Assembly: GCF_902459465.1 (NCBI RefSeq) | Contig: NC_047076.1 | Span: 7,874,001 to 7,938,000, forward strand | Length of the DNA: 64,000 nucleotides | From: Asterias rubens | Lineage: Eukaryota | Direction: 5' to 3' | Shown: positions 22,661-53,900 of the stretch, piece by piece | Position numbering within the stretch: position 1 is the first letter of the stretch | How the letters are laid out: every line of letters begins with the position of its first letter | Program-made: the position numbers and the translations under genes | Notes under the pieces: generated by a model | Seen by the model: the letters and a program-made list of their open reading frames with translations, nothing else | Databases searched by the model: none | What the model was told of the DNA's origin: nothing

Positions 22661-23583
22661 GATCTTATGTTATGTATGATACACAAGACTTATGTACACT
22701 ACACTGGGGTCAACATATGACTAACTCTAAAGTATTCGATGAACCCAAACCATCCACTGAAACACAAATCAGCGTTGCATGAGACTAGCAGGGCACTCTT
22801 TCAGAAACATTAAAAAAAACTGTCTCTTAGCTTTGCCCAGTTTCATAGAGCTGCTTAAGCAGACAATATTGCTTAAAAATATTCTGCTTAGGAGACATGA
22901 GTAATATACCAGTAACAAGTTTTACTTGTGCGAGCTTCCAACTGGTCTTTCTAATTTGATGAGGGATAGACAAGAGTGGGCAAATCTCAACATGATTCCG
23001 ACCTCCGTCGGCTATGAGAAAGAGACGGACGTTTTACCCATTGGCTCATTGAAGATTACTGGTCACATCACTATATCAACACATGTAAAGTCACATCACT
23101 ATATCAACACATGTAAATAATATAGAAGTCTTTTTTCAAAGGGTCAACTGTGTATAAATTAAAGTGTGTACAAATGAAATTAACTAGCATATCGATCCAC
23201 ATCAGGTTTATTTCAGCATTTAGCTTTTAAAAGTTTGTAACTAAAGAGAATCATTTGACTGTCTTCTTAATATCTTTGAAAATAAACCTCAGAGAGAAGA
23301 AGAAACATATGTGCCAAAATATCTGTTTTTGTCCACAGTTGAATGAATTAAATATTTGGGAACTGTTGAGTATATTTTGAAGAATGAACCATACACTGAA
23401 GCCATTCTAAGATTCATACAAACTTGTAAGATGACGCCACTGAGATTTATAAAGGCATTATTAAATGCTTGTATGGCACACTCAAACAAATTCGACAATG
23501 ACTACCCCAAAAATTTCCGATACTGAAAGTGAGAATGAAAAATGAACAAAACTTTATAAAATAAAAAAAATTGGAAAAATACG

Positions 23584-23656
23584 TGCCCCGTGTGAGGCTC
23601 GAACTCACGACCTTCAGATTATGAGACTGACGCGCTGCCGACTGCGCCAACGAGGC
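23584..23656 (-). tRNA. tRNA-Met(CAT), elongator type
   Basis: Reverse complement is GCCTCGTTGGCGCAGTCGGCAGCGCGTCAGTCTCATAATCTGAAGGTCGTGAGTTCGAGCCTCACACGGGGCA (73 nt). It has a full cloverleaf, intact A/B boxes, and is near-identical to metazoan elongator tRNA-Met. A TTTTT Pol III terminator follows a few nt downstream. Confidence 0.96.
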
Positions 23657-23950
23657 ATCTGTTCACGATGGTATTTTTAAGGTTTATATACTTTTTACTA
23701 TTTATAAGTGCAAAACACGCAAGCGCAAAAGTAGCTTTTTTTCGCTGGTAACTTTTTAGTGCATGTAATATGATGGATACGCGTGAACCAGTGAAGCAAT
23801 TAGAATTCTGTTACTCATATGTGGTGCACAACGAACAAGGGGCCGGTGTTCTCAACAATTATTTTGGTAAGGTTTTCATGATCTTTTAAAAAGTATTAAA
23901 GGAGAGAATACCTCCATTTTAAACTTTAGATAGTTGAAAAATGGGTAAGG

Positions 23951-24082
23951 GGAAAAGTTTCCGTATGGCGCCACCACTTTTTCATTCGCAATAAAATAAT
24001 ATAGTATCTAATTTACCTGATTGATATATCCCTTTTTGTAAAAATGAGTGAAAAAGTGGTGGCGCCATACGGAAAGTTATCC
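23951..24082. mobile_element. 132-bp palindromic Merlin-like MITE
   Basis: TIR GGAAAAGTTTCCGTATGGCGCCACCACTTTTTCA / TGAAAAAGTGGTGGCGCCATACGGAAAGTTATCC, with an 8-bp TSD GGGTAAGG/GGGTAATG. Confidence 0.75.
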
Positions 24083-24389
24083 GGGTAATGTGCTCCTGAG
24101 GTTTTTGAGCGCTTGAAAGCTACGTTTTATCAAAATGTCTCATTTGTCTGGGCCGGCACCTTACGCCGTTACGGTTTCCGCTTTCAAATTCATGTGGAAA
24201 GGTCAACTCGACCTGACTGAGTATTGCAGTTTTTGTTTACCCCCCACCCTCCCCTCCCCCCCAACACTATTTTAGTATTTGCTAGTGCTGCAGATTGATA
24301 ACAGCGTTCTTTAAAAAACACCTTTGTTGTGTTCTGAGTGAGTGATTATAGCAAAAGGAATTTTTTTATATTATTAACATAAATAAAAT

Positions 24390-24683
24390 GGATAACTTTC
24401 CGTGTATGGCCGCGCCACCACTTCACTCATTATTTACTATTAATTAAAGAGGAATATTAAAGGGATATCTCATTGAGGTAAATTAGAGGAAAAGTTTCCG
24501 TATGGCGCCAACACTTTTTCATTCGATATTAAATAATATAGTATCTAATTAACCTCAATGAGATATCCCTTTTTGTAAAAATGAGTGAAAAGGTGGTGGC
24601 GCCATACGGAAAGTTATCCAAATTAGAAACTATATTATTTCATATCGAATGCAAAAGTGGTGGCGCCATACGGAAACATTTCC
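24390..24683. mobile_element. Merlin-like MITE with a second copy (24488-24619) nested inside it
   Basis: The inner copy is flanked by a perfect AAATTAGA duplication; the outer copy is decayed. Confidence 0.75.
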
Positions 24684-24779
24684 CCTAAAATAATTGAAGT
24701 CTTTATTGATTATTAAAATTTGATTGTTTTTATTTATAAAACATGCTGGAAAAAGTGTAGGGGGACTTGTAAAAAGTTG

Positions 24780-25648
24780 TAGTTGCGATAACGTAACCCT
24801 CCTGCCGACGGCGGAGCTGGAGGGTTACGAGTCACACGCAATCTGTGCAGGGCGAAATGGTCAAACACGTACAATTTCGACAGCTAGTCAATAGATTTGC
24901 TCAATTTTTACCCCTTTCGAAAATCATGACACAAATTCTATGAACCAACCTTAATCCTCAATATCTAATGAATAACATTTAAAACACCATTGAGAAAGTA
25001 TTTTAAAAAAAAGTACAAAAACTTACCAGATTCCGGAGCGAAACAGTCACAAATTTCCCAGGTTCTATTTTGAACCTGTCGCTTCGCCATTTTGTGACTT
25101 CCCGATGTTCATTGCTGTTGGACTAAACCATTCTGTAAAAGGGGTGTTATAAGGCAGCGCGGCAGGGCGTGTGCGCTGTCCGTTTACTATTTGCCCGCTG
25201 TTCACTCACTAGCGCACTGCCGCACTGCAGCTGCACCCATTGTAACACCCCTTTTACAGAATGGTTTAGTCAAACTGGGCTGCGGCTCGGTCGGCAGGTC
25301 GTCAATTCAATTGGCTGGTACCTACGGTTGGGTTCAGCGCTTGGGGTCAGCGCTTGGTAACCAGCGACAGGTTCAAAAATAGAACCTGGGAAATTTGTGA
25401 CTGTTTCGCTCCTGGGATCTGGTAAGTTTTTGTCCTTTTTTTCAAAATATTTTCTCAATTGTGTTTTTGAATGTTATTCATTAGACATTGAGGATTAAGT
25501 TCGTGTTCATAGAATTTGTGTCATGATTTTTGAAAGTGGTAAAAAATGAGCAAATCTGTTGACTAAAATATTTCGCCCTGAATCGATTGCGAATGACTCA
25601 TAACCCTTCGGCTACGCCGTCGGCAGGAGGGTTACGTTATCGCAACTA
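24780..25648. mobile_element. ~870-bp element with ~300-bp terminal inverted repeats (TAGTTGCGATAACGTAACCCTCC…GGAGGGTTACGTTATCGCAACTA) and an inner 45-55 bp inverted repeat
   Basis: 24780-25083 is the reverse complement of ~25353-25648, and 25117-25165 pairs with ~25215-25272. A 56-bp ends-only relative lies at 52202-52257. Confidence 0.75.
25353..25421 (+). promoter_or_regulatory. Probable non-coding first exon of the RGG/zinc-finger gene (donor GGATCTG|GTAAGT at 25421/25422, acceptor TTAG| at 26034); 5' boundary uncertain
   Basis: The coding exon has an acceptor 15 nt upstream of its ATG (26050), so it needs an upstream exon. The nearest consensus donor, next to a GC-rich promoter-like core, is this one. 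Confidence 0.5.
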
Positions 25649-26049
25649 GGGGACTTGGACCTTTTTCTGTGGTCGTGTGGATTCCACGGTTTATTTACAC
25701 CTTTCAAGATTGTACTACCTTTTTGGGAAAGATTTCTTTATCCTGCCAACATTGTAATCCTGCCAACACTTCACTAATTTTTACCAAAAGGTTTATCGCA
25801 TTTGAATAATATTACTTATTATTAGTTATTTATTTCATAACAAATGAAAAAGTGGTGGCAGGATTTTTACCCAGCACTAATTTTTTTACCAAAATGTTGC
25901 CATCTTCAGTCGTACTGCCTACTACAAAAAAGTTGTGGTTCATTATAGTTGCAAGAATTGTTAGTTTCTGCAGATCAGTTGTGATGATCAACAAATTTAT
26001 TTTCAGATGTATAATTTTATTCTTTGATCCTTAGTACAGTACTTGAATC

Positions 26050-29000
26050 ATGTACGGTAACAATAGAGGTATGGACTACTCTTCCCAGTACGGAGCAAGT
26101 AGTAGTATGCCATATAGCATGGACCTCTCTGGTTATGGAACAAGTGGTGACAATGAGGGCTATGGATCGTCGATCATGCAGGACACCTCCTTCTCTTCTT
26201 TCCCAAGTGGGAATGGACAAGCAGGAGGCATTAAGTACTTCGGAGGGCCTCAAGGATCTTTCCACAATGGTCCCGGAAAGAGCATGGGTGGAAACTATGG
26301 TAGCAGTGGAGTGCAACGTGGCGGGAACCGTGGAGGAAGTGCGGGGCGTGGTATGGGGCGTGGTGCTACAGGAGGCACTGCTAGAGGTGCTGCAAGGGGC
26401 GCTACTAGAGGCGCGGCAAGAGGTGCTGCAAGAGGCGCTGCAAGGGGTGGGGCATCAGGGCGAGGTGCCACAACGGCAGGAAATGGCGCAATCAAAAAGG
26501 TATCTACACCTGGAGTGTCTACAATGGATAAAGATGAATCGGGGTACCTTCAGGATCATGCTGGTCACTTTCCGGATGAATACTGGTGTAAGGTGAGTTT
26601 GTTGCACCGGCAGGGGACTTTTGGGACGCCAATTTAAGTCTTTTTAACTTCTGTCATGTATTTTTGTGATATTTTTATTCAACCTCATTGAATTGAATTG
26701 AATTGAATAGGTGGTAGCAGATTTACCAGGTAAATCCATTTTTCTTGGTAATGTGCGCATGTTAAGAAGTACTTAAAATGGAAATTTTACTTGTAAGTCT
26801 GCTGCGTCCTGCCGTCCAAAGTCTCGTATTGTAACCCTCCATACTCCTGAGGGTTGCTGACCGGAGGATTACAATGTTAAAGGGTTTGGATACTTTTTGT
26901 ACAACACAAAAAACAATGTCCAAAACAAGAAATCTTCATTTAAAATATTACCTTCTTAGGTGCTGTTTTTATTTTGAGAAATGAGTCAAACAATGCCATG
27001 AAAATAATTTTTGTCTCAGGAGACAACAATTGATAGCATGTACAAAGTATTAATGCGACTCTCCTGAAAACACAGCTGTGTGATTTTCACTTTTTATTCT
27101 TAAAAACTTGACGACTCATGAAGCTGAAACTTCTACAGGTAAATTTTATTACAAACATCTTTAGTCACAGTGAGTAGAGATTCATGTCATGTCCAAAAAC
27201 TTGATCCACAAAAGGTGTATCCAAACCCAGGTAGTGACTAGTGACCAGATTTGCAGTAGTCTTTCATAAATTAAAGATGAAACTAACATTATCTGTGGTT
27301 GTTACAGATCTGCAACGCAAAGACGACAGGACCCAGCAACTACCGACAGCACATGAATGGGGTTCGTCATCAACAGGTACATAGTTTATGACACAACGGC
27401 ATTTTATATTTGATACCCTCGAAGAAACAATGCCAAGATCATCCAAGTCTACCATTCTGGCCAAAATGCTTAGGCCGCCCATTCCTAACGTTACATAAAA
27501 CCAATCCCTTTACACTTCCCACTGACAATCATTCTCTTCCTCGTCCCCCCGCTCAATGTTGACTGTAACGCAGAAGACCGAGCAATCAGAACCAACATTA
27601 AACAAAGGGTGCAGGGGGGCCCCAACGAGATATGGCCTAGATTCTAGCTATCCAAGTCGAACAATGCCGTCAGAAATGAAAACTGCACATGTAAGCTAAC
27701 ATAGCAGTCTTCTGACGTCAAGTCTTCACTTGGATGAGCTGGCTTATTCACCATCTGTGCCTAATTTTGTGTAATTCAGCACATAAATAGAACATTTCTT
27801 GTTTAAGTTTATATTTGATGATGTGATTGAGACTGGGATTGAGAAAGGGATTGCGACTGTTGTGTTAATATTGGAACTCCACTGTGAGATTCACAGTGGA
27901 TTTTTTGATAACTTTTCAAATTATTTTGAACTAAACTTGTTAGAGAAAAATAATATCGTAGGAACACAAAGTGTTGTGTGCTCTACAGTTTTTCACTGGT
28001 TTCACAAAAACAAAAGTTTTTATCTGAAAGATCACACAAACGTATCAGGACAATTAAGGCTTTTATTTCCTACAAAGCAACTGTTCAAGTTTGTGAACAG
28101 TTAAAACGTTTCTTTTCTTTTGAAATCTGTTGAATATTCTAACCTTTATGAATATCAAAAGCTCAGAAGCCACTCAGGACATGGTCTCTGTGCCCTGGAC
28201 CCAATTTTGAAGAGAAAATATTGCTGGAATAGTTGTGCTAGAATGAATCAGTAAGCATGATATATTGGACAAGTATTTTGGTTGATAACATTGATTTGAT
28301 AAGCGCATTTTGTTGTGCTTAGCAATTTTGAATGAATGAAAACTTGACTTGATTTTCCTGCTCAAATATTTTGTGCAAAATTTATTTAAATGTATGTCTG
28401 GTTCCCAGGTTTTATACAGGCTTTATTTCAAACAGATAACAAAGTCCATTTTTGTTCTCTAAAAAAAGTGTACTTGAAGCCAAACTTCAAGTACATGTTG
28501 TTATTTTTTACACTGTGAATAAGTATCACAGGGTAACTGCAAATCAAATTTGGGTAGGGTGTCTTCTTTCAAAAACTATAGATTAAAATGCACATTGTTT
28601 GTGCATTCGTATAGGGTTACTGTATATACCTGCGTATGGTTCTCTATTCCTTGCCTGTATAAATAATGGGAACCAGTTTATTTGAACAACCAAGATATGG
28701 TTCATTAAATTGTATGTTTGTGATAATGTTATCATGAAACTTATGATGCCAGAGGAGCATTCCCTTTCCGGAGGGATGCAACTTGGCCGTTCCTAATCCA
28801 ACTTGTTTTCTCTTTTCCCTTCATACTATAGAATCTCCAGAGCATTCAACAGGGCGGTGAGTGGACAGGTGCAGAGGGGCGGATTTTGGCACCTCGCCAA
28901 AATCCCCGCTGACACCATTGTTCTCACAATGATGAAGTGCTGTATGGGAAATATTTCAACATTGCAATTAAAAGCTCATCCTAAAAAGTTTACTCGGTCA

Positions 29001-32000
29001 GATCCTTCAATTGTCGCGGGGAAAAAGTTAACATGTACCTGCCATGTGAAACTTCAAAGGACAATTTGGAAACCAGTTCAGCTGGTATCCATGCCCCATT
29101 CTTAGCCTCCGCAGGCACAGCTATTTTCCTCTGATAAAGGGCACTTATATGAGGAAAATTTGTATTGCAACATTTCGCAAAGGGCACCGCCTTCATAGCA
29201 CAGGGCACCACAGCAATTGCTGTAAGTGACGTTGTTCATTTGGAGGCCTGCCCTCAGTGCACTGCCTCAGTGCCCTGTGAGCCATTTAAGATCATTACAC
29301 AGTTACCACATAAATAAAGCTTAAATGGTTTTGTATGTTGCAATGCATTGAATAGTAACAGTAAATAAACATTACAAGGAATTTGAGTAAGCGCCAATTG
29401 CAGGAATATTTCCCATACAAATACGCTTTGACTTTAGCTGTACTATCTACCCTTACTAGAAGTCATCTGCGACATAAAACATCTGCTCAACAGTGTTTAT
29501 GTCTTGTACCAATTGCTCACCTGTAGCAGAGTAAGAAATTATTCTTGAATTTGTGTTTCGTGCTGTGAAAGTCAGATTGATTGGCTGTTAGTTGAAATAT
29601 TTGTTGTCCGAAGTTAAGTTTTAACTGTTCGGCAAACCAACAATGCTTGCATGGGTTAGATAATATCATTATTTTGAGTCAAATGGAAATTTCTTTTGAT
29701 GTAAATCTTTTGGATTGACAATATTTAGAAATTGTTACATACAAATGTTGCAATTTTGTGCAATGGTTGTCTGAAGTTGGAAATATTTCAACATACTTGC
29801 TAAGAAAATGTCTGATAAAAAGAAGAAGTATGCATCAATCAGTCATTCGCAGGGTGTAAACAGAGGTTGTTTACACTGTACATGTGAGCTCTATGAAATA
29901 TACCTGTGTATTCATAGGCCATGAATTTATGCATGCATGCCCATTGGTAAATCAAGTTACACAATAAGGCAAATTCTTGACCAATCAGATATGAGTATGT
30001 CAAGTGTTTATTTACATGAAGCAGCAAACCAATCAAACCCTGTACTTTCACAGCATAAGAATTTTTTTCTCTGGAACTGCAACAAAATCGCGGGGTACCA
30101 ACACTTTGATTGGTAAACATTACAGTTTAAAATTGAGTCATTCAGGGTTCTCCAGATTTTAGAAACTTTCAGTTTGAAGTAAGGCGACCAGCCAAAGTGG
30201 ATACGATTGCGTATGGTTACCACTGGTTACCACTTTCACAAACTGGTTACCACTTTCAGAAATGTGCCTAGTAGTACAGAAAAGTCATGGTTAGGAGTAA
30301 CAGATTACCAGTTAAACTGCCATGTAATGTACATTGCTTTTGACTGGTCTCCTGCTACTTGTGCTTAGCTAATCACTTTGTAATGCAACAATTGTCATTA
30401 ATCTTATAATCAAAGTCCACACGCTTGGGTGTTCAGATGCCTGAAGCCGTTGTACTTTAACTGATTTAAAAAAATAGCCAGTTGAACCATGTTTGGTTCC
30501 CTTAGATTCCCCCCCATTAAATATGGCCAACAGTTGTGCTGTTGTGTTGCAATCACTGATGGTATAAATGAGCCTCTATCTGGCTTCTGAAATCATTGGA
30601 GAACCCTCTTCGAGTAACATAACAAACAAATATTTGTAAATCAAATATTTACTTTGGCTTAAGAATCAAGTATTTCCGAAAAAGTTGCAGTTCCAGCGAA
30701 TTTTATTCAACAGTTCATTTACATTTACAAAAAACTGCCGCGTTATCATTTTCAAGGCCCAATTTTTTTTAAATGCCACTAGTCTACAGGTCTTGTAGCT
30801 CAGAACTCTCATTGGACCAGATAGATTTTAAGACCAAAAATATATATTTTTTGTGTGTGAGAATTATTTACTGAACTCTTGGAAGGCGGTTCAAACTAAA
30901 GAGCTTAAGTGAAAAAAACATAAGATTTTTTGGTTGTGGGGTTTCTGACCAAATGCTTAAACTACTTGACTCTGGCCAGGGGTCAAGCGGGTATGGTAGG
31001 TCAATTGTAAATCGAAAAATAAGTTTTAAACACAAAGCTAACAACTGGAACCAATTTCAGAAGTGAACGCAAGGATCCCCTGAAATATTTCTGTTTTTAT
31101 CTCAGCCCTTTGATTTAAGGAAAACATTACAGTGAATTTTGTTTTTGTGTCGGATGTGGCCTGATTCAAGAAAAATTTTCCTTAGTTTAGAGAAAGAACC
31201 ACTTTGTAGCCAGGCAGCGACCAGAGGAATTGAGGCAAATGCCTCCATTGTCTCTATAAAGTATGAGGCCTGCGTATTACCAAATTTATTACTACAAACC
31301 ATCATGTGAAAAAAACAAAATGTAAGGATTTGATAATCACAAGAAGCATTGGTTACGGGCTCATTCCCTGAAAATGTCTTTCTGGGTTATTAAAACTGTC
31401 ATCAAAAGCGTGCTAGATTTGAATTGTCTGGTACGATGATCTGGATGATCACAAGTTACCGTTTAAATTTGATTCCCTCAGACTATCCAGACAGTTGCTA
31501 CATGTATGTCACATGATTCAGGCAAGCGTTTGCGTAGTAAGTTCTGTTAGAGACGGTGAACCATGTGTGCCGCAGTGGTACCAGGGTTTGCTGATCTGAG
31601 TGTGCAAAAGCTAGCCCGAACCATTCGATATAGCAACTGTCAGTATAGTCTGAGGAATTCAAATGTAAATTGTAACTTGTGACTAAGCAAGTCATTGTAC
31701 CAAACTTTATTCAAATTCAACTCGCTGGCTTCTTATAATGGTTTCTAAGCTTGCAGGATAAATATGAATGTCGTTAAACCACAGAGTATTTGTTGTATTT
31801 TACAGTTGCCCCTCTTAAGACTGGACCTCAGACACCTCGCAAGAGGAAGATGGAGGCTGAAGGAATTATACCTAACAAGAAACGCTTGAAAGAAATGATT
31901 GCTGGCAGTGATGAAGCTTTTATCGGTAAAAATCATCATCTTTTTATCCGACTATCAAGTTGACCCTCTTACTGTGTGACCCATTATTATTACCACTATG

Positions 32001-35000
32001 GTTTTTTATAAGACAATTACAGTGTGAGGTGCTGTTCTTAACAGTGTGGTTATGAACGTGTAGGCTGCTGTCCGACCTTATTCCCAACAGTCTTTGGTTC
32101 GAATACCTCACATGTAATATTCCTGTGGACTGTGCTCACATAACTTGGGGAGTAGGGGGGAGTACCGAGTATACCGTGCATGATATATCAGTGTATTGAT
32201 AAAAAGATTCGTTCCTGGCTTTGGCTGTTCAGTGTGCTGCAGCACCATCATAACTGTTCTCATATCACAAAAAAGACTCTAAGGCTGTCTTAATAAAAAA
32301 CAATAAGCACTTTCAAAAAATCCGCAGATTAAGTTTATAAAACTTGTCGTTATTATTATCACTAACATAAATTTTACATCTGATAAAATTTTACATCTGA
32401 TTTTGTTTTTTGGGCAATGTTAGGAGTGGAATACGTGACGTATACAAAAATCGTAGATACAGTTTATATAACTTGTTATTATTGTTATCACTGACATAAA
32501 TTTGATAAAATTTGACCTAAATTTTCTTTTTTTGGGCCAATGTTAGGAGTGGAGTACGTGACTGAGATTCTCCGCGAGGGATCCGAACCCGAGTACGATT
32601 GTGAGATTTGTACTTGCCGGACACTACAAGGAAACATCCTCTTTCATCTGACAGGATTCCGCCATCGGTTTGCGTTCATTGTAAGAAACCATCTTGGTCT
32701 AGTTTCCTCTTTGCAAGCATACAACGGACTCTCTTTGTTATGACAAAAAGGGCCACACTGTTTTTTCTATTTAACAATTTGGGTACTTTTTGTAACACAA
32801 AACACAATGTCTTTTTGAGGTTGAACAAAGAATTAACTAGAGTGGAATTTGAACCAACGACCTCCGGATTAACGTGCCGGCGCTCTACCAACTGAGCTAT
32901 CTAGCCCTATATTGGCGGTGTCCCTATTTTGTCAATTGCAATGTCCACAGATTTAGAAGAGCATTAGTGGATAGTGTTAGCAGAAAGCTTACCTTAAAAT
33001 ATTACTAGCTGAGGTGCTGTAGTTTGAGAAATTAGTAAAACAGTGTCACACAAATATTGTTTACATGCTAGAATTGTTTTGGTCTTTAGAGACGAAAAAT
33101 ATTTTTTTGACTCTCATTTCTCAAAAAGTACAGCACCTCGACAAGTAATATTTTGAAGGGAAGCTTTCTATCATCATAATTTTTAAACTGTGTGAGTTTG
33201 ATGTAAATCTGTGGACATTGTGTTTTGTGTCCTACAAAAAGTACCCACACCCTTTAAGAACACTTATGTTGATGAATCTTATACAATTTTCAAGACATTC
33301 GTGACGTCGGGAAACATTTTGAAGTTCATACTATAACCATTTTTTCTGTAAAATATTTATCTCTGAAATTAAATCATATTTGATAAAATATCTCTAAAAC
33401 TGTCTCTAAAAACCTTAAATAAACGCAGCAGCTGATTTTGGTTGTTACAACCTTATCTATGGTCAGTGTGTTTACATGCTGTACAAATTGTGCAGGGTTT
33501 TTCACTTTTTTCTTTTGACTCGCACAAATTGATTAAGCCCAAATTTGGACACAGCCCATCAAACAGTTATGTGACCAACACTCTGGTAGATTGATCACAG
33601 TCCAATTTTGAAATTATTTCCGTTATCAACAGACCAAGCACAAACCAGATATTGCGGAGGCCATCGAAGCAGGAGCCAGAGCAATGGAGGAAGCAGAAAA
33701 AGCCGCTAACCCTCCCGACCCAGCAGCCAGCGTCACCGTAGACAACGAAGGGAAGGAGAAGAAGAAACCTTTGAGAGGGCTGCGGGAGAAACTGAAAGAG
33801 TACATCCAAGAGGTGGCGGCCGAGTTCCCTATGAAGCCACCCAAGTTTAAAGTCATTAAGGATATGCTTCCGCCAGGTATTGACACGACAACTTTCTTGC
33901 CCCTTCTCTCTTAAGCCCTGTTCATACTTCATGCTAATGCGAAGGCAAAGCCAAATTGACGTGATTTTGACGTCACAACTCTCCTTTCGCAGCGTGATTT
34001 AGCAAGAGAGTTAAGCAAAGTTCAACTGTTGCTAATTATTTGTTGAGAATTTCTGACGTCACCATGCGCTTCGCTTCGCGTTTGCAGGAAGTTTGAACCG
34101 GGCTTTCGGCTGTATCTGAATTGTCAGCTACAGTTATGGCTTTGCCTGTATGTTAGGTTGTTGTTAAGATTGGCTTATGTCAACGCATAATGACGCAATG
34201 ATCTAACCATAGCTGCAAATTCTGACCTGGATTTAGTTTGTTGGATTTGTTTGAACGATGGTTAGTCTATGCCAGCCTGCTATATGGTGGTGGATGAATC
34301 TAAACAAAACACAGTCAGCCCCCTATTGTCTGGCCATTCAATATTACCCATTGTAGTTTTAAATGAAAGATAAACTATGCCAGCCTCCAATATGAAATAA
34401 TATGCGAATGCATCAAACACAACCTGTGTGGTTGAATGGTTTGATATGGTTAGACCACTTGTGTTAGGAGGGCAAAGCGAGAATGTTCAGATGAAGGGAA
34501 GTTTTTCCCAGACATAATATAGAAGCCATTTCCTAGTTAATGTTTGAATGATGTCTGATACAGTGACTTCATTGGTAACAAACAATGCTTATTATTTATT
34601 TCTAAGATTTAATCCAGACTTTATTCTTTTCAGCTGCCAAGAAACCTGCATTGACAGCTGTCGCAAGCGGAAGAGGTCGTGGTGGTGCCAGTAGCTTAGC
34701 TGGAGGTCGTGGCGGTGCAGGTAGCTTTGCTAGAGGTCGTGGTGGTGCTGGCAGCTTTGCTGGAGGTCGTGGCGGTGCTGGTAGCTTTGCTGGAGGTCGT
34801 GGTGGTGCCGGTAGCTTTGCTGGAGGTCGTGGTGGTGCCGGTAGCTTTGCTGGAGGACGTGGTGGTTCCGGTAGCTTTGCTGGAGGTCGTGGTGGTGCCG
34901 GTAGCTTTGCTAGAGGTCGTGGCGGTGCCGGTAGCTTTGCTGGAGGTCGCGGTGGTACTGGTAGCTATGGTGGAGGTCGTGGTGCTGGTAGCTATGGTGG

Positions 35001-38000
35001 AGGTCTTGGTGGTGCCAGTGGCTTTGCTGGAGGTCGTGGTGGTGCCAGTGGATTTGCTGGAGGTAGTGGGGGATCAAGTAGTTTCAGTGGAGGGATGAGT
35101 GGCTTTGGTGGAGGTTATGGAGGTTCAAGTAGCTATGCTGGAAGTCTAAGTGGAAGTCTTAGTGGCCCCAGTAGCTTTGGAGGAGAAAGTTACGAGACAG
35201 GAGGTGAGTTTCCGCGGGTGTCAGATAATCTTAATTAGATTTAATTCGTTTTGCAATAACATCCTACAAAGTTTAAGTTAACTTCAAAAATGAAAGGTTG
35301 ATATTTACCAATCTGTTTGAAGTGGGAGAGATCTCCTGAAAGCAAATTTGTATCTTTAGGCAACTTTAGGTATCTCAAGGTAAGTTTTGCTAACTCAATG
35401 TTACTCAAGGTAACTTTAGTTTAATCATGGTAACTTCAGGTAACTCAAGATAACTTGGGGTAACTACAGGTTTGAACTCTGGATAACCCTTGGGAACCTC
35501 ATATAAAAACCTTTAGTCTGACCAGGGCCCATTTTCATAGAGCTGCTCTAAGCAGAAAATAGTGCTTAAATATGTTGTGCTAAGCAAAAATAGGCAGGAT
35601 ACCAGTCACAGATTACACATGTGACATGCTATGTTGGCTGATAACCTTACTTTGGTAAGCAAAATATAGTTGTGCTTAACTGCTCTTTTATGCTTTAAGC
35701 AGTTCCATGAAACTGGGCTTTGAACTTTTTTTTAATTTAAATTTTACATTCCTCCCTGAATAATACATTTTTGATGTTGCATCAATTAATCATTTGCAGG
35801 TGGTTATGGACGTGGTAGCGGAAGTGGGATGATGGGCAGCAATAGCATGGGAAGTGACTATGGAAGTACAGGAGGGCGTGGTCGAGGGTTGGGTCAGTAC
35901 TCGGACAACTCGGACCTTGGCGGAGGGTACGACCTACCGCCTCAGAGTAAAGTCAGCTCAGTCAAAGCGTAAGTTTAACAATCAGTTGACTGTCAGAACA
36001 AACCTAGTCCTATAAGAGATGTTAAATTTGCATCGGGGATAAAGAATATTAATTTTTTTTTTTACCCATACACCGATGTATGTAAGCACTGTATACTCAG
36101 TACTTTCCCGAGTCCTGTGAAAAAATATCACAGGCATTTTACTCGGGTGGGATTCGAACGACCTCTAGCTACTCAAGACACTGCTCTAGAATTGCAAGGG
36201 TCGTGGGTTCGAATCCCACCCGAGTAACATGCCTGTGATATTTTTTCACAGGACTCGGGGGGGAAAGTACTGAGTATACAGTGCTTACACACATCGGTGT
36301 ATGGGTAAAAAACCAAAATGATTAAACCTAGTCCTCTTTTTACACTCAGTCAAAGTTATTCCGACTTTACCCTTTCTTATTTAAACTTGCCCTTAGAATA
36401 TGCAAATGGAGTTAATGGACCCTTAATCTAACCTGAGACAATACAAATCTGGGCGCTGTACTATACTTTAGACATGGACTATACAATCATGGCCACTGGG
36501 TTGTGGCACAAAAGGTCAGGCTGGAACATTTACAATATATACTAAGGGGTCCTGTGTCCTCACCACTTTGCTCCTATTGGTTCATAGCCACCAATTGTTT
36601 CTGAAATGGAAACTTTGATTGGCTGTAATTTTCCCGCTTCTTTCTGGATCCTTCCCTTAATCCCTTTCCCCTCTCTTTTTCTTTAAATGGATATGTATTT
36701 GTTTGTACTTGTTTTATGCCTCTGAAGAAGGTCCAGTTTAGATCGAAAGCTAAGGCCATCTACCCTACTTATTATATATACAAAGGGTTTATATAAAACA
36801 TGTAAAGTAAGAAAATGAACATTCATACTATATCTAAATGCTGTTTTTTTTTGGTGTGACATTGACCCCAAGCTTAATGTGCACTCATGGTACATATCCT
36901 GTCCGCCATTTTGGGAGTCAAAATCATGCACAAACATATGCACAAACGATTTGACTCTAAAAATGGTGGAAATGGTAGACCAGATTGTTCGGAGGTGTAC
37001 TCAGTGTTAGGTAAAGGGTCTGTAGAAATCAATCATCCTCATTCGCTTTGTAACCGCTGGAAAAGGCGCTTTAGTAAAAGCTGCTAATTAGTGACATATA
37101 ATACAAATTGGTGCAGTTACATGTATTTCAAAAGAACAATCGCCCCATTTGTAGAGAACAAATCGCCCCACTTGGAGAAGGGGTGTTTTGGTAACTTATT
37201 TATATTTACTTTCTCATGTTAGTGAGCTTGATAACTACTTGATGGACACCCTGAAGAAAGACTCGTTGGTCAGCGATGCCTTCATCCTGAGGGAGTTTGA
37301 ACGTCGTTTCGGCACCTCCGTGAGGCGGGGGAGGACGGACAATTATGATGATGATGCTGGACCATCCCAGAGGGATTCCCATGTGAGTTGACAAAAAAAT
37401 AGTCCTGGTCCAGGGTTCGATTTCACAAAGTTCTTGAGATTAGTTATCGGACCAGGGGTCGATTTCACATAGATCTGGAGATATATCAACAAAGTGATTT
37501 GTGTTGTGGCGTCAAGTTTTTGCTTTGGTTTAATCGCCACACCTTGTGAAATTGAGCCCGTGGCCAATTCAGTACATAGCCAAAAGCAAAACAAGAACTC
37601 GCAAGATAAGTTTTTTTAAATAGTTTTTTTAATCTGAAGCTTTTGATGGATTTTATTTTGGTGGCTTGTCAACGCTTTAAAATTGGTTCCAATTTGGAGA
37701 GCCTGAAACTGAAATAAACCTTAACAAATTTTGCTCTCGTTCATCAAAAGAATATGTTGACTTCCCAGTTTGGGTTAACCGGACGATGGTCTGAGGGATG
37801 ATGATATTAAAGGCCGAATTACAGTGACCCCACTGTGGGACACGGTGACAATAACCGGTGAAGCGAATAATTGATAAACTGCTGACCTCAGACCGTCATC
37901 TAGAAGGGTTAAGTTCTGGAACGATTCGGGAATTCTTAGGGCTCAAAGTGGTGGTAGATTTCTGAGAAAGTTTTTATGAGTGGTAGGCAGTGTTGGAGGA

Positions 38001-41000
38001 AACTGAGTGTAGAAATAGAAATGGTAGGCAGAGACCCCTAAGCACAGCCACACTTTGTGTCTTGGTCCCAATTTCAGGGGCTTTGCTTTCTGCTTTTTGT
38101 CACTGATTGTTTTGTGTATGTGCTGTACTCGCCACTAATTCAAACCCCACTGTATGTTCTCTACATAGATTATTGTTTCCTGAATTCTGTTCTGTATTAT
38201 TAATTTTTGTTTCTCTATTTGAAAGTTGCATTGATTAAAAAACCTCATTGACTGTGGGTGACATTTCCCAGTGAGTTGACCAACCCTTCGAAAACCCCCC
38301 AACTGAACAGGGCCCAATTTCATGGCTCGTCTTACCGCCAAATTTTGCAGCTTACGAGCAAGGGCTGAGTTTTTGCGCTAGCTGTGTAAGCGTCGAATGC
38401 CTAGTTACATGGAGTGCGCAGAAGCTTAAATTCTCTGCTTACCCGTAAAATATGCTTGAGCAAGGGCTGAATTTTTGCGCTAGCTGTGTAAGCATAGAAT
38501 GCCTAGTTACATGGAGTACGCAAGCGCAGAAGCCAAAATTCTCTGTAGATCACATGATTCTCTGCTTTCGTAAGCATCAATTCTTTGCTGTTTGCTCTAA
38601 GCAGAGCCATGAAATTGGGCCCTCGTTGTGTATGGTGGCACAACTATGCACATCACATGATATCATATTGTATTCTGTCAGAACAACAGTGGATGATACT
38701 GAATAACCCTTTAAAACCATTCAATTGCACAGGTTCTGTATGATGGCATGACCGTGCACAGAACTATCTTGTTTACATGTGTGTACCATGTACATGTAGA
38801 TGCATTCTTATGGTATCATTCACATGAAATCAAATTTCATGTGAATTATTCATGGGATATGAATATGCTTAAGTCATATTCATGAAGGAAAAAATATATG
38901 AATATGTAAGAGTCATATTCATTGGGTATGAGTATACATAGTCATGAATATACTTGAGTCATATTCATGGGACATGAATATGCATGAGTCATATTCATGG
39001 AAAGTGGAACACATGAGTCATATTCATTGGAAATGAATATGCATGAGTCATACTAATGGGGTATGACCAACATGAGTCATGAATATACATGAGTCAAGTT
39101 CATGGCAAATGAAAATGCATGATCCAAATTTATGGTAATGAAATACGTGAGTCTTATTCATTGGAAATGAACATATATATGAGTGAATATTCATTGAATA
39201 TAAACATATGAATATCTATGAGTCATATTTATGGGATATGAAGATGCATGAGTCATAATCATATATCTCCGTAGAAAGTTTTAGATTAAAATATCAAAAC
39301 GTTCATTTTACGACAGGTATAAACTTTGAAGCCCATATGTATAGCTCCTTACTTAGCCAATTATATAGCCCCTTGTAAGGGATTACAAGGCGTTGAGGTA
39401 CAATTTGCAGCCAACCATGCCAGAGACATCATGCCCTTCTCTTAATGATGTGTGAACTGGGTTCAATAACGTGTATTACACAATACACAGGACCTAGGGC
39501 TTTACGTCTCATCCGAGGGACAAAGCAATTAGTGTCTAAGTGTCTTGCTGAAGAGCCATGACTGGGACACGAACCCACACTCTAAACTCAATTTTCTGCA
39601 AACTACACACATGCAGAAAAGTTGCTGAAAACACCCTCTTTGATGTCAGAAGTAAACAGAAGAACAAAAACCGTTTTGTTCCTTGTGCTGTGCATGCTTT
39701 TTCGGTGGTGAATATTCAGACGGAACTTTTTGAAACAATTTTCCCAGGTGAGCCCCCTTTTTTCCTGCAGACATGTCAAAGTGTCTGATTACTTATTCTG
39801 TGTGGTTTAATTATTCTGAATTTTATATTCTCATGACTTTTTTAAAAGTGGTTGTTGTGAGATGTGAATAAATTAAAAACCTGGGGGAAAAAAAAGTATT
39901 TTTACAACCAAGAAGGATTGACAATATCATACTTTCTAAAATTAACAAACACAAATTTGTCGCCTGAACATTAAACAGAAATATTTTCACCAACAACGTA
40001 TCTTAATTTACATGAAACTAATGTTGAACATTGATTTAATGACAGATTAACTTAACATTCTTTGTCCAAGTGTAACATTTAAAATTTTTTTTTTAGTCGC
40101 CCAAACAAGGATAAAAGCCACTCTAGGTAAGGGGCTAGAAGAAGAACATGATTAAACATGGAAATAACTCGGTAGAGCTGGAGGCAGGAATTAATATTCC
40201 TCTTGAAATAAGACTGCTTAATGATAGAAACCAAAGCGGTACTTCTTAAACAAAAATTTCATGTGTTTTTTTATGAAGCAATACATTGTGGAAGGACAAT
40301 CTCATCACCCGCTGTTCATATTTATTCATATTTTTTAGCCACAGAATTCACTGTCAAGCTATTCAAGCTATAGCAATTCGGGAGAGTACACCTCCACACA
40401 GCCAAAGCGTGAACCTCTGCTTTCAGAGTCTTCACGCACATCGGAAAATACGTACAGCTACCAGGGGACGTCGTCGTATCAGGGGACGTCGTCGTACCAG
40501 GGGACATCGTCGTCGCGTCCACTGCCCAGTAAGGCAAACGCCGAGCCTGACAACAGCCCAAGTGTTCAGCAAATGTTTGCAAGTCTGGTGAGCTAAGAAA
40601 CAACTTTAGTTACCATTTTGAGAGAGTAACTTCAATATTCCACTTAACACTGCAATGTGCTGATGAAAGATATTCAAAATATTTAAAGTTGGTTTAAGTA
40701 GTGGGATTGCCTTAGTCTTTATCTTGGATCGAAAATCGTCTAATTTGGATTTTAAGCTTTGCATAGAGGAGAAGTGAAAGTTACTTTCCGAGATGACAAT
40801 CCTGAAATAGTTTCTTCTTAGTGGAAGTAGTGGTTCTGCCTCTGTAAAGCGGATGGGAGTCTCTACACATTTTACCTTTCCATTTCACATTTTCTAGGGT
40901 GAAAGCTATGATATAATCTTTTATTAGTAGAAGGAGTGGTTCTGCTTCTGTGAAGCAGATGAGACCCAAGTCTCTACATTTCAGAACTTTCCATTTCAGA

Positions 41001-50908: not shown

Positions 50909-53900
50909 ATGGCGGCGCCCATGGACCATCATCGTCGACAAAAATCTTGTGATGTAAGGCCAGCTTACAGGGAAGGTAGACGAGAAAGAGCTGTGAAGGT
51001 TTGTTAAAATATTTAGATATATGATTGCTTTGTTTTTTTGTGTTATTTAAATGCAAAGCCAAGGGAAAAATAGAAATTGGAAGTCTGTACGGAGGGTCTC
51101 CTGTACAGAATTTGCCCAGTTTCCGGACACGCGCAACTGACTCGCTCAAACAAAGGAGCCTCAATGCCTAAACCAATTAAAGCTGTCTAGTTCTGTTTAA
51201 TTCATGAATTACTAGATTGTTGAATCAATTTTGTACCCAGTCTCATGCACAATGCAAGTAATTGTGTGCCATTACCCAACTATGCTCTTGACACATTTGT
51301 ATGCGTGAATAAAAAAGGGAAAAATAAAAAAAACTCAATTATGTTAATTGCTTTGGTAGAACTAGACGAGGAACCCTAGACCATTTCCTTCCTTCATTGA
51401 TACTTACTACGACTGGAAACATTTCTGTATATTCAACTGTTACTTAAAGACAGTGGACACTATTGGCAATTGTCAAAGACCAGTCTTCTCTCTTACTGTA
51501 TCTCAACATGTGCATAAAATAACAAACCTGTGAAAATTTGAGGGATAACTTTCCGTATGGCGCCACCACTTTTTCACTCATATTTACAGAAAGGGATATC
51601 TCATTGAGGTAAATTAAATACTATATTATTTCATATCGAATGAAAAAGTGGTGGCGCCAGACGGAAACTTTTCCAATTTGAGCTCGATTGGTCGTCGAAG
51701 TTGCGATCGAGATATGAATGAAATTAAAAAAAACTTGTCACATGAAGTTGTGTGCTTTTAGATGCTTTATTTGGAGACCTCAAGTTCTAAACTTGAGGTC
51801 TCAAAATCAATTTGTGGAAAATAACTTCTTTCTCGAAAACAAAGTCACTTCAGAGGGAGCCGTTTCTCACAATATTTTATACTAGTAAAGAAAGTAGTAT
51901 CAACCTCTCATCATTACTCGTTACCAAGTGAGGTTTTATGCTGATAATTATTTTGAGTAATTGCCAATGCAATAGTGTCCACGCACGGCCTTTAATATTA
52001 AATAAGCGGACACAGAAATGTTACCTGTCCCGTAGTCGTAGACTAAATTAAAAATTAAGTCTTACCACTGTTTTTCAGTCCCTTAAATCTCAATCTAATC
52101 ACACTTCACGTGCCAATGGTATTGACTAATGTTCCTCAATATCTGCATTATGTAAAAACTCATTAACGAGTCTTAGAACCTTGGCGCTCACCGGCTCATG
52201 CTAGTTGCAAAGGTAACCCTCCTCCTGACGGTAGGAGGGTTACGTTATCACGAACTAGGCTTGACATATGAATGCTTGATTGTAGATTTGAGGTTCACAA
52301 AGATGTTTGCATGTTTCTATTAGTTAAATTTAAAACAAATGTATATTTTATTAATTTTTCATTAGGCCCCTATACAAAATACAATGAATATATCCTTATC
52401 ATTGATCCTTTCCTGTTGTAGGCCTAATTGTTTATTTTACATAATTTTGTATTGTGTCCCCCTTAAAAAAATACAGAAAATTGTGTTCAAATGGTTAAAA
52501 TTACATGATGGGAAACATTAAAAATGCACAACAAATACTTTACTGAGTGCTCTCACATCCCAAGGTTTTTTCAAGTTTGGACAAAGTAGGCTGTATTTTT
52601 TCCCTTAGTTTTTAAAGTTCAGACATTTCTGTTGTGACAAGTTTTTCCTGATTTTTACCACTTCCCCAAAACAAAGCACACATCAAGGTTACATACGTAT
52701 ATCCGATGTGTAATGAATCAATCACGACTGGTCACTTAAACGTTCAAACGTCATAAAGAAATCCTTTTCCCTAAAACAAATAAAAAGTTATCAAAGACTG
52801 TTACAGTTGTTCTACATTGTACTTCATCCCTGTTTTGAATTCTGGTTGTGTGTTTGGTGGACTTTGAGTTACAATTTTAAGTTAAGAAAGTTTGTTATTT
52901 GAATGCAATGTTTAGGTCCTTTTGCAAGATATTAATAGGCCTACATGTTGCGCTTTACTGCCCTGTGATTTTCATCATAGTGTCTGGGTGTTATTTTGAA
53001 ACCCTGTTTTTAATTTGAATACCCTGGTTTAAATTTGAACACCCTGTAACACATGTATGTTGTATTAAAGGCAGTGGACACTATTGGTAATTACTCAACA
53101 TAATTATCATCATAAAACCTTTCTTGATTACGAGTAATGGGGAGGGGTTGATAGTATTTAACATTGTGAGAAACAGCTCCCTCTAAAGTGACATATTTCG
53201 AGAAAGAAGTAATTTTCCACGAATTTTATTTCGAGACCTCAAGTTCAGAATTTGAGGTCTCGAAATCAAGCATCCGAAATCGCACAACTTCGTATGACAA
53301 TGGTGTTTTTTCTTTCATTGTTATCTCGCAACTCCGACGACCGATTGAGCTCAAATTTGTACAGGTTTGTCATTTTATGCATATGTTGAGATACACCAAC
53401 TGTGAAGACTAGTCTTTGACAATTACCAATAGTGTCCACTGTCTTTAAAGTGAACAATTTGGACACCCAAAATTTCCAGCAAATTTGGACACCCTTTTTT
53501 TTTACCAAATCCTGGCTAAAACTTTTACTTTCATCCCGTTCTAGGTGTATACGATCAATCAGGAGTCTCGCTACTTGCTGGTCCAGGGAGTGCCTGCCAT
53601 CAACGTCACCGATGAGCTGTTGAAACGTATGTCACTGTATGGCACAATAGAAGAGTACAAGATACTAGAGGAATATCCAGCTGAGGCCTTCACCAAGGTG
53701 TATTGGGTCAAATATGCAAACATACAAGCAGCAAGGTATAATAGAACAGAATTGCAAAGGTTGAATCCCACCTGAGTAATATGTCTGTGATTTTGCTTAT
53801 AGAACTCGGGGAAAGTACTGAGTATACAGTGCTTACACAAATTGGTGTATGGGTGAATTCAAAATTGCTATTCTTTACGATTGCCACACCTACATTCCAA

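What the first reader, a model, noticed from the sequence alone, without database searches (positions are those of the whole stretch)
24780..25648. Long inverted-repeat element with mirror-image outward-facing exon/splice-donor cassettes that may supply the promoter and first exon of the zinc-finger gene
Seen in sequence: both ~300-bp arms contain the same block ending in a consensus donor facing outward (plus GGATCTG|GTAAGT at 25421; minus GAATCTG|GTAAGT at ~25027). These surround a GC-rich core with a CGCCATTTT YY1-like motif (25086). The first coding exon of the downstream gene has an acceptor at 26034 and no other obvious upstream exon. Each terminus carries a stem-loop (TAACCCT…AGGGTTA) ~11 nt before CTAG/CTAC, like a Helitron 3' end, and a 56-bp ends-only version sits at 52202-52257. 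Inference: a mobile element, either a long-TIR DNA transposon or two head-to-head Helitron-like ends, was exapted as a bidirectional promoter. It would drive the gene rightwards and possibly a spliced non-coding RNA leftwards towards the tRNA-Met.
Basis: partly seen in the sequence, partly recalled or inferred. Interest (0 to 1): 0.7.

Follow-up and report, generated by a model that had tools for sequence, protein, structure and literature searches.

The report
Intronic long-inverted-repeat transposon, not a promoter
The flagged 869-base inverted repeat is an ordinary non-coding copy of an abundant cut-and-paste jumping gene sitting in the first intron of a zinc-finger gene, whose conserved first exon lies 2.2 kb further upstream.

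Summary
The inverted repeat at 24780-25648 is real. It is one of at least 20 near-full copies (87-97% identical) of a dispersed 866-bp family. Its 30-nt terminus occurs 1,424 times in the genome, against 0 for the control.

Copies have perfect terminal inverted repeats (TAGTTGCGATAACG...) and 9-bp target-site duplications. Derivatives of 75-119 bp made of the two ends alone carry the same duplications. This is a non-autonomous long-TIR DNA transposon, Mutator-like by elimination. It is not a Helitron pair, a local duplication or an assembly artefact.

The "exon/donor cassette" rests on one GGTAAGT heptamer. It belongs to the family consensus and is no better conserved than many other 7-mers in the arms.

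The premise that the gene has no other upstream exon fails. A spliced transcript-like contig of the orthologue from a relative has a 5' leader matching window 23685-23801 (z = 25 against shuffles). A TTG|GTAAGG donor follows at 23866/23867. The element therefore lies in intron 1 (23867-26034).

Use as an alternative promoter is therefore unsupported, not disproved. No autonomous partner was found.

The parts
23685..23866 (+). Conserved non-coding 5' exon of the zinc-finger gene. Its start is undefined and lies at or left of 23685. The donor is TTG|GTAAGG at 23866/23867. It contains the conserved palindrome-like motif CGCAAGCGCA.
   Evidence: The 5' leader of L037 (nt 3-123) aligns to 23685-23801 at 73% identity over 124 columns, local score 50 against 13.5 +/- 1.5 for 300 shuffles. 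The donor was read.
23867..26034 (+). Inferred intron 1, a 5'-UTR intron, filled with MITE-like repeats and holding the 869-bp element.
   Evidence: Bounded by the donor at 23867 and the acceptor at 26034. In L037 the leader is joined directly to the coding exon.
24761..24769 (.). Left copy of the 9-bp target-site duplication, GGGGACTTG.
   Evidence: Identical 9-mer at 25649-25657.
24770..24779 (.). A 10-bp filler, TAAAAAGTTG, between the left TSD copy and the left terminus. This junction is atypical and unexplained.
   Evidence: Other copies have the TSD directly abutting the terminus.
24780..25083 (.). Left arm, a long terminal inverted repeat. The terminal 34 nt, TAGTTGCGATAACGTAACCCTCCTGCCGACGGCG, are the unit shared by all derivatives.
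24792..24829 (.). Subterminal palindrome (hairpin) of the left end.
   Evidence: I19; -15.3 kcal/mol, z = -4.7.
25021..25027 (-). GGTAAGT heptamer of the left arm, a donor-like site facing left.
   Evidence: It is present in the family consensus and intact in 55 of 70 arms examined.
25084..25362 (.). Unique GC-richer core of the element. It includes CGCCATTTT at 25085-25093 and an inner palindrome, 25117-25152 against 25240-25275.
   Evidence: I8. In the diverged copies fetched with flanks the core comes with arm sequence.
25363..25648 (.). Right arm, a long terminal inverted repeat. The inner block at 25373-25402 is, with the termini, the best-conserved part of the arms.
25421..25427 (+). GGTAAGT heptamer of the right arm, a donor-like site facing right in the sense of the gene.
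25649..25657 (.). Right copy of the 9-bp target-site duplication, GGGGACTTG.
26035..26592 (+). Second exon and first coding exon of the matrin/U1-type zinc-finger gene. ATG at 26050, donor AAG|GTGAGT at 26592/26593.
   Evidence: tblastn of the L037 ORF matches 26050-26598, 27296-27376 and 31805-31954.
52202..52257 (.). Old, degenerate ends-only derivative of the same family: two termini around a short loop, with decayed TSDs.
   Evidence: Young counterparts of 75-119 bp have perfect 9-bp TSDs.

Best explanation
The 869-bp element is a non-autonomous cut-and-paste DNA transposon. It has arms of about 300 bp, a 279-bp non-coding core and no ORF, and it belongs to an abundant, recently active family of this genome.

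The family is mobilised in trans. The enzyme recognises the 34-nt termini (TAGTTGCGATAACGTAACCCTCC...) and makes 9-bp target-site duplications. With the long TIRs, this points to the Mutator (MULE/Foldback-like) superfamily. That assignment is an inference by elimination, because no partner was found.

This copy is 3.6% diverged from the family consensus. It inserted at GGGGACTTG inside the 5'-UTR intron of a matrin-type zinc-finger gene, 386 bp upstream of that intron's acceptor. The gene's conserved leader exon lies about 0.9 kb left of the element, next to the tRNA-Met.

The outward-facing GGTAAGT in each arm and the CGCCATTTT motif are family-consensus sequence mirrored by the inverted repeat. 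They are most likely silent intronic sequence here.
For: Mobile element:
- At least 20 near-full-length copies at 87-97% identity on many contigs.
- The 30-nt terminus occurs 736 + 688 times with up to 3 mismatches, against 0 for the reversed control.
- In the window it occurs only at the two ends of this element.

Target-site duplications of 9 bp:
- 7 perfect and 5 with one mismatch among 17 full-length copies.
- 6 perfect, 3 at 8/9 and 1 at 7/9 among 10 short derivatives of 75-917 bp.
- The 75-119-bp derivatives consist of the two termini alone, so the terminal 34 nt or so suffice.

Age: copies lie 1.4-4.5% from an 866-bp consensus. Older subfamilies at 75-88% identity keep the same arm sequence around the core.

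Donor heptamer:
- It is in the consensus of both arms and intact in 55 of 70 arms.
- Among arm matches under 89% identity to the right-arm consensus, 27% of 7-mer windows are at least as well conserved.

Upstream exon:
- L037 lacks the introns that separate the corresponding coding segments in the window.
- Its leader matches 23685-23801 (z = 25; alignment A1).
- A donor lies at 23866/23867.
- The predicted leader of at least 197 nt compares with 217 nt in L037.

CpG decay of this copy is like that of other copies: 6 of 46 CpGs lost, against 3.2% substitution at other sites.
Against: - No RNA of this species was examined, so use of the element as an alternative promoter or exon is not excluded.
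- The upstream exon is inferred from a relative at 64% protein identity (best tblastn segment).
- No autonomous element carrying these termini was found. The 4 MULE-domain loci and 12 Merlin loci examined lack them.
- The inner arm block is conserved as well as the termini, and the adjoining stretch with the heptamer is conserved above the arm average. This hints at some function for the family.
- This copy's left junction has an unexplained 10-bp filler.
Confidence: 0.8

Rival explanations
1. One reading: the element was exapted as a bidirectional promoter. Its right arm would supply the promoter, first exon and 25421 donor of the zinc-finger gene, as the main or an alternative form. Its left arm would drive a spliced non-coding RNA leftwards.
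For: - A perfect GGTAAGT faces the gene 613 bp upstream of the acceptor.
- The core is GC-richer and holds a YY1-like 9-mer.
- The inner arm block next to the heptamer is conserved above the arm average.
- Mutator TIRs are known to provide outward-reading promoters in maize (bioRxiv 10.1101/2023.06.05.543741, found).
Against: - A conserved leader exon with its own donor lies upstream and is the one used in the relative's spliced contig.
- The motifs are family-wide, not specific to this locus.
- One heptamer per arm is near chance expectation.
- CpG decay of this copy is like that of other copies.
- No transcript evidence exists.
Confidence: 0.08
2. The family belongs to the Merlin superfamily (IS1595-like transposase), which also makes 8-9-bp duplications and can have TIRs up to 462 bp.
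For: - The TSD length of 9 bp is compatible with Merlin (PMC8101967).
- The genome holds a young Merlin family with at least 8 open 312-aa frames.
Against: - Merlin TIRs end in a conserved 5'-GG-3' (PMC8101967). These end in TAG.
- None of 12 Merlin loci fetched with 1.5-kb flanks is bounded by these termini. Only incidental neighbouring copies appear in L051 and L054.
Confidence: 0.07
3. Two head-to-head Helitron-like 3' ends, or a local inverted duplication, or an assembly artefact.
For: A hairpin lies about 12 nt from each end, and the right end reads ...CTA followed by G.
Against: - 9-bp TSDs and perfect TIRs across dozens of copies. From general knowledge, Helitrons make no TSD and have no TIRs.
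- The element is dispersed on many contigs with conserved boundaries.
Confidence: 0.01

Closest known systems
Non-autonomous Mutator-like elements (MULEs), e.g. maize Mu1 and the non-autonomous Muta1 derivatives of Aedes aegypti
   Same: Long TIRs over 100 bp, 8-10-bp (here 9-bp) target-site duplications with no obvious target consensus, many internally heterogeneous non-autonomous derivatives sharing only the termini, and frequent insertion in or near the 5' ends of genes (PMC5225508).
   Different: No MURA-type transposase partner with these termini was found. The arms carry a subterminal palindrome. Hairpin-only derivatives of 75-119 bp are abundant. No captured host gene fragment was detected.
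Foldback-type elements (Drosophila FB; sea-urchin TU elements, recalled from memory; Foldback-type elements noted earlier in this genome, s1-175460)
   Same: The inverted repeats make up about 68% of the element, the TSD is 9 bp, and most copies lack coding capacity.
   Different: The arms are unique sequence, not arrays of tandem subrepeats (one search reports no direct-repeat family within 24780-25648). The core of 279 bp is constant across subfamilies.
Outward-reading promoters in Mu TIRs (Mu-suppressible alleles of maize)
   Different: There it is shown by transcripts. Here there is no transcript evidence, the element is intronic, and a conserved upstream exon exists.

Membership tests
Mutator / MULE superfamily | Target-site duplication of 8-10 bp, typically 9 | tested here: met
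   9-bp TSDs. Among 17 full copies, 7 are perfect and 5 have one mismatch. Among 10 short derivatives, 6 are perfect and 4 near-perfect.
Mutator / MULE superfamily | Long terminal inverted repeats (over 100 bp) | tested here: met
   Arms of about 300 bp, about 92% identical in the consensus apart from a 22-nt gap in two pieces. The minimal mobilised unit has only about 34-nt TIRs.
Mutator / MULE superfamily | Autonomous partner with the same termini encoding a MURA-type DDE transposase (Pfam MULE, PF10551) | tested here: inconclusive
   Only 4 PF10551 matches in the genome. No termini within 1.5 kb of any, nor within 6 kb around the 1046-aa frame on C5. The full list of 1,424 termini could not be paired.
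Merlin superfamily | TIRs ending in a conserved 5'-GG-3' | tested here: not met
   The termini read TAGTTGCG.... The criterion is from PMC8101967.
Merlin superfamily | IS1595-type transposase between the family's termini | tested here: not met
   12 Merlin loci with 1.5-kb flanks are not bounded by these termini.
Helitron | No TIRs and no TSD, with insertion between A and T | tested here: not met
   Perfect TIRs and 9-bp TSDs. The criterion is from general knowledge.
Foldback elements | Arms built of tandem subrepeats | tested here: not met
   The repeat finder reports no direct-repeat family inside 24780-25648. Tandem Repeats Finder was not run.
TE-derived (exapted) promoter or first exon | Transcripts start in the element and splice from its donor to the host acceptor | not testable with these tools
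   A conserved leader exon lies at about 23685-23866 with its own donor. It is homologous to the leader of the orthologue's spliced contig.

The most novel reading that the evidence does not exclude
The inner part of each arm is a family-level functional module: the conserved block AAAATAGAACCTGGGAAATTTGTGACTGTT plus TCTG|GTAAGT. It would be an outward-facing promoter or leader with a splice donor, making every copy a natural promoter or exon trap. Such a copy could splice into downstream host exons, including here as an alternative 5' exon of the zinc-finger gene.
Probability: 0.06. Interest if true: 0.6.

Novelty: new member of a known kind. Interest (0 to 1): 0.15.

Why it matters
It matters mainly for annotation.
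- The stretch should be masked as a transposon family with a minimal 34-nt terminus and a 9-bp TSD.
- The gene model should start at the conserved leader beside the tRNA-Met, not at the element.

The family is young. It has perfect TSDs and hairpin-only derivatives that define the minimal sequence needed for mobilisation. That makes it a convenient handle for finding the still unidentified transposase in this genome. Earlier notes name the genome as the starfish Asterias rubens; I did not verify this.

Tried and rejected
No letters of 23583-23647 were sent to any search tool afterwards, and they were masked in my scripts.

2. cDNA of this species through the protein index. The exon-1 query gave only P0001 and P0002, and neither contig's DNA was available.

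3. Autonomous partner.
- MULE-domain loci and Merlin loci lack the termini.
- A copy split by 2 kb holds a truncated LINE reverse transcriptase.
- A copy split by 5.3 kb holds an unrelated transposon with its own TIRs, TAGGTAYGTGACAA, and ORFs without Pfam matches.
- The interior of the 917-bp derivative is another long-TIR family.

4. The idea that the GC-rich core is an independent nested MITE. Rejected: the diverged 'core-only' hits are flanked by diverged arm sequence.

5. RNA families. Rfam gives nothing in the element. The weak plant-miRNA hits at 23951-24688 are palindromic MITE artefacts far below the gathering scores.

6. The joined step was left out. The hypothetical spliced junctions (25421+26035 and 23866+26035) were not typed or searched.

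Full report
**Observation**

The stretch 24780-25648 is a long inverted repeat. The repeat finder gives collinear complementary blocks of 79, 61, 54, 37, 35 and 16 nt at 89-100%. Together they define arms at 24780-25083 and 25363-25648 around a 279-bp core.

- GGTAAGT heptamers facing outwards, with the last exon-like G at 25421 (plus strand) and 25027 (minus strand).
- CGCCATTTT at 25085-25093.
- The acceptor at 26034/26035.
- Subterminal palindromes in both ends.
- A 56-bp ends-only version at 52202-52257.

The left terminal palindrome folds far better than shuffles as single-stranded DNA (-15.3 kcal/mol, z = -4.7). The decayed right one does not (z = -1.4).

**It is a mobile element**

A search of the window's own genome (417.6 Mb) with the 869 bp found more than 20 near-full-length copies at 87-97% identity on many contigs. 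There were 1,102 first-look candidates. The 30-nt terminus TAGTTGCGATAACGTAACCCTCCTGCCGAC occurs 736 + 688 times with up to 3 mismatches, against 0 for the reversed control. In the window it occurs only at the two ends of this element.

Seventeen full-length copies give an 866-bp consensus and lie 1.4-4.5% from it. The window copy lies at 3.6%. Older subfamilies at 75-88% identity keep arm sequence around the core. A local duplication or an assembly artefact is therefore excluded.

**What kind of element**

With 45-nt flanks, the copies start with TAGTTGCGATAACG and end with its exact reverse complement. They are flanked by 9-bp direct duplications, for example ATTACTTGA, CTCAGGTGA, TCAAAATGG, ACGTGAAAT and GCGTCACTA. 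Seven are perfect and five have one mismatch among the 17.

Ten shorter elements were picked from the spacing of termini. They measure 75, 78, 81, 81, 94, 119, 345, 348, 429 and 917 bp. Their 9-bp duplications are perfect in 6, 8/9 in 3 and 7/9 in 1. The shortest consist only of the two 34-nt termini around a short GC-rich loop.

TSDs and perfect TIRs rule out Helitrons.

Among cut-and-paste superfamilies, a 9-bp TSD leaves two candidates:
- Mutator-like elements, with long TIRs over 100 bp and 8-10-bp TSDs (PMC5225508).
- Merlin, with 8-9-bp TSDs but TIRs ending in a conserved 5'-GG-3' (PMC8101967).

The termini here read TAG. Twelve Merlin transposase loci of this genome are not bounded by them. 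I therefore file the family as Mutator-like by elimination.

The defining transposase was not found. Only four MULE-domain matches exist, and none has these termini nearby. Three longer 'copies' turned out to hold nested insertions of other elements:
- a truncated LINE;
- a 5.3-kb unrelated transposon with its own TIRs;
- another long-TIR family.

**The window copy**

The duplicated 9-mer GGGGACTTG lies at 24761-24769 and 25649-25657. On the left it is separated from the terminus by a 10-bp filler, TAAAAAGTTG (24770-24779), which I cannot explain.

**Is it the gene's promoter and first exon?**

Three lines of evidence argue against this.

First, the motifs are family properties. GGTAAGT and CGCCATTTT are in the consensus. 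The heptamer is intact in 55 of 70 arms. Among arm matches under 89% identity to the right-arm consensus, 27% of all 7-mer windows are at least as well conserved. That set includes the left arms of young copies. By my arithmetic, about 0.04 such heptamers are expected in a 304-bp arm read on both strands, and the mirror copy follows from the inverted repeat.

I note one point in fairness. The inner arm block (AAAATAGAACCTGGGAAATTTGTGACTGTT) is conserved as well as the termini, and the stretch with the heptamer is conserved above the arm average. Some family-level function of that part is possible.

Second, the premise that no other upstream exon exists is wrong.
- A scan of metagenome contigs with the first coding exon found L037 (JACSEG010038375.1, 1,163 nt).
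- Its reading frame matches window 26050-26598, 27296-27376 and 31805-31954 without the intervening introns. It is therefore a spliced transcript, or a copy of one, from the orthologue of a relative (64% identity in the best tblastn segment).
- Nucleotides 3-123 of its 217-nt leader align collinearly to window 23685-23801. Identity is 73% over 124 columns. The local score is 50, against 13.5 +/- 1.5 for 300 dinucleotide shuffles, z = 25.
- A TTG|GTAAGG donor follows at 23866/23867.
- Exon 23685-23866 plus the 15 nt between the 26035 acceptor and the ATG gives a leader of at least 197 nt, close to the 217 nt of L037.

The element therefore lies inside intron 1 (23867-26034), together with several other MITE-like repeats.

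Third, this copy has lost CpGs like other copies: 6 of 46, against 3.2% substitution elsewhere. That gives no sign of special protection, though the argument is weak.

**What could not be done**

Public runs holding the gene exist, including raw RNA reads.

As required, I did not type or search joined (spliced) sequences. The two candidate junctions therefore remain untested. An alternative promoter in the element is unsupported but not excluded, and I give it about 8%.

**Comparison with what is known**

The element works like a non-autonomous MULE or Foldback-like MITE. An outward-reading promoter in a Mutator TIR is a known phenomenon in maize (bioRxiv 10.1101/2023.06.05.543741).

Earlier notes of this scan name the genome as Asterias rubens. 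They describe other 9-bp-TSD Foldback/Mutator-type elements and a similar 'leader exon in TIR' idea that public RNA data did not show. I used these as leads only.

**Verdict**

This is a real, well-defined and ordinary intronic transposon copy: a new member of a known kind. The promoter and first-exon reading is not supported.

Noticed in passing
window 23656-23690: The conserved leader exon of the zinc-finger gene begins within about 30 nt of the 5' end of a minus-strand tRNA-Met gene (23583-23656), so the two are arranged head to head. The leader holds a conserved CGCAAGCGCA palindrome-like motif at 23718-23727. A 15-nt match to the same part of L037 recurs at 38519-38533.
   Followed up: partly
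window 23950-24700 and 25750-25870: Intron 1 is packed with other palindromic MITE-like repeats that share GTGGTGGCGCCATACGGAAA. They produce weak, sub-threshold Rfam hits to plant miRNA families, which are artefacts.
   Followed up: no
L006 (G000:C8:5709439-5710304): One full copy is inserted, with TSD GGTTACGAG/GGTTACAAG, just after the terminal hairpin of a related element. In L036 a LINE fragment sits at position 38-42 of another copy. The hairpin region may be an insertion hotspot.
   Followed up: no
L027+L072 (G000:C2:7087294-7092591): A 5.3-kb transposon with TIRs TAGGTAYGTGACAA lies inside a copy. It carries a long SLELHNSLTP tandem-repeat ORF and downstream ORFs with DDE-like motifs (GFDATT, MSDRAAVN, CHLHPLD). 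Pfam gives no hit.
   Followed up: partly
L071 (G000:C1:14861170-14862086) and many loci: A second abundant long-TIR family of about 0.8 kb, with arms of about 305 bp and many copies at 97% identity, is nested in a mini element. This genome holds several families of the same architecture.
   Followed up: no
L045-L056: A young Merlin family with at least 8 copies, each keeping an open 312-aa IS1595-type transposase frame.
   Followed up: no
L033 with L038 and L039 (G000:C5:16412781-16415918): A 1,046-aa open frame with a MULE domain and no flanking inverted repeats within 6 kb. It is possibly a domesticated transposase.
   Followed up: partly
window 24770-24779: A 10-bp filler, TAAAAAGTTG, lies between the left TSD copy and the left terminus of the window copy. 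A similar 14-mer, AAAAAGTTGTGGTT, lies at 25927-25940.
   Followed up: no
window 26362-26459 and 34606-35235: Two RGG/RGA-rich repeat exons. The first is a 12-nt periodic array. P0001, a 96% identical protein from a public assembly, goes out of frame exactly there.
   Followed up: no
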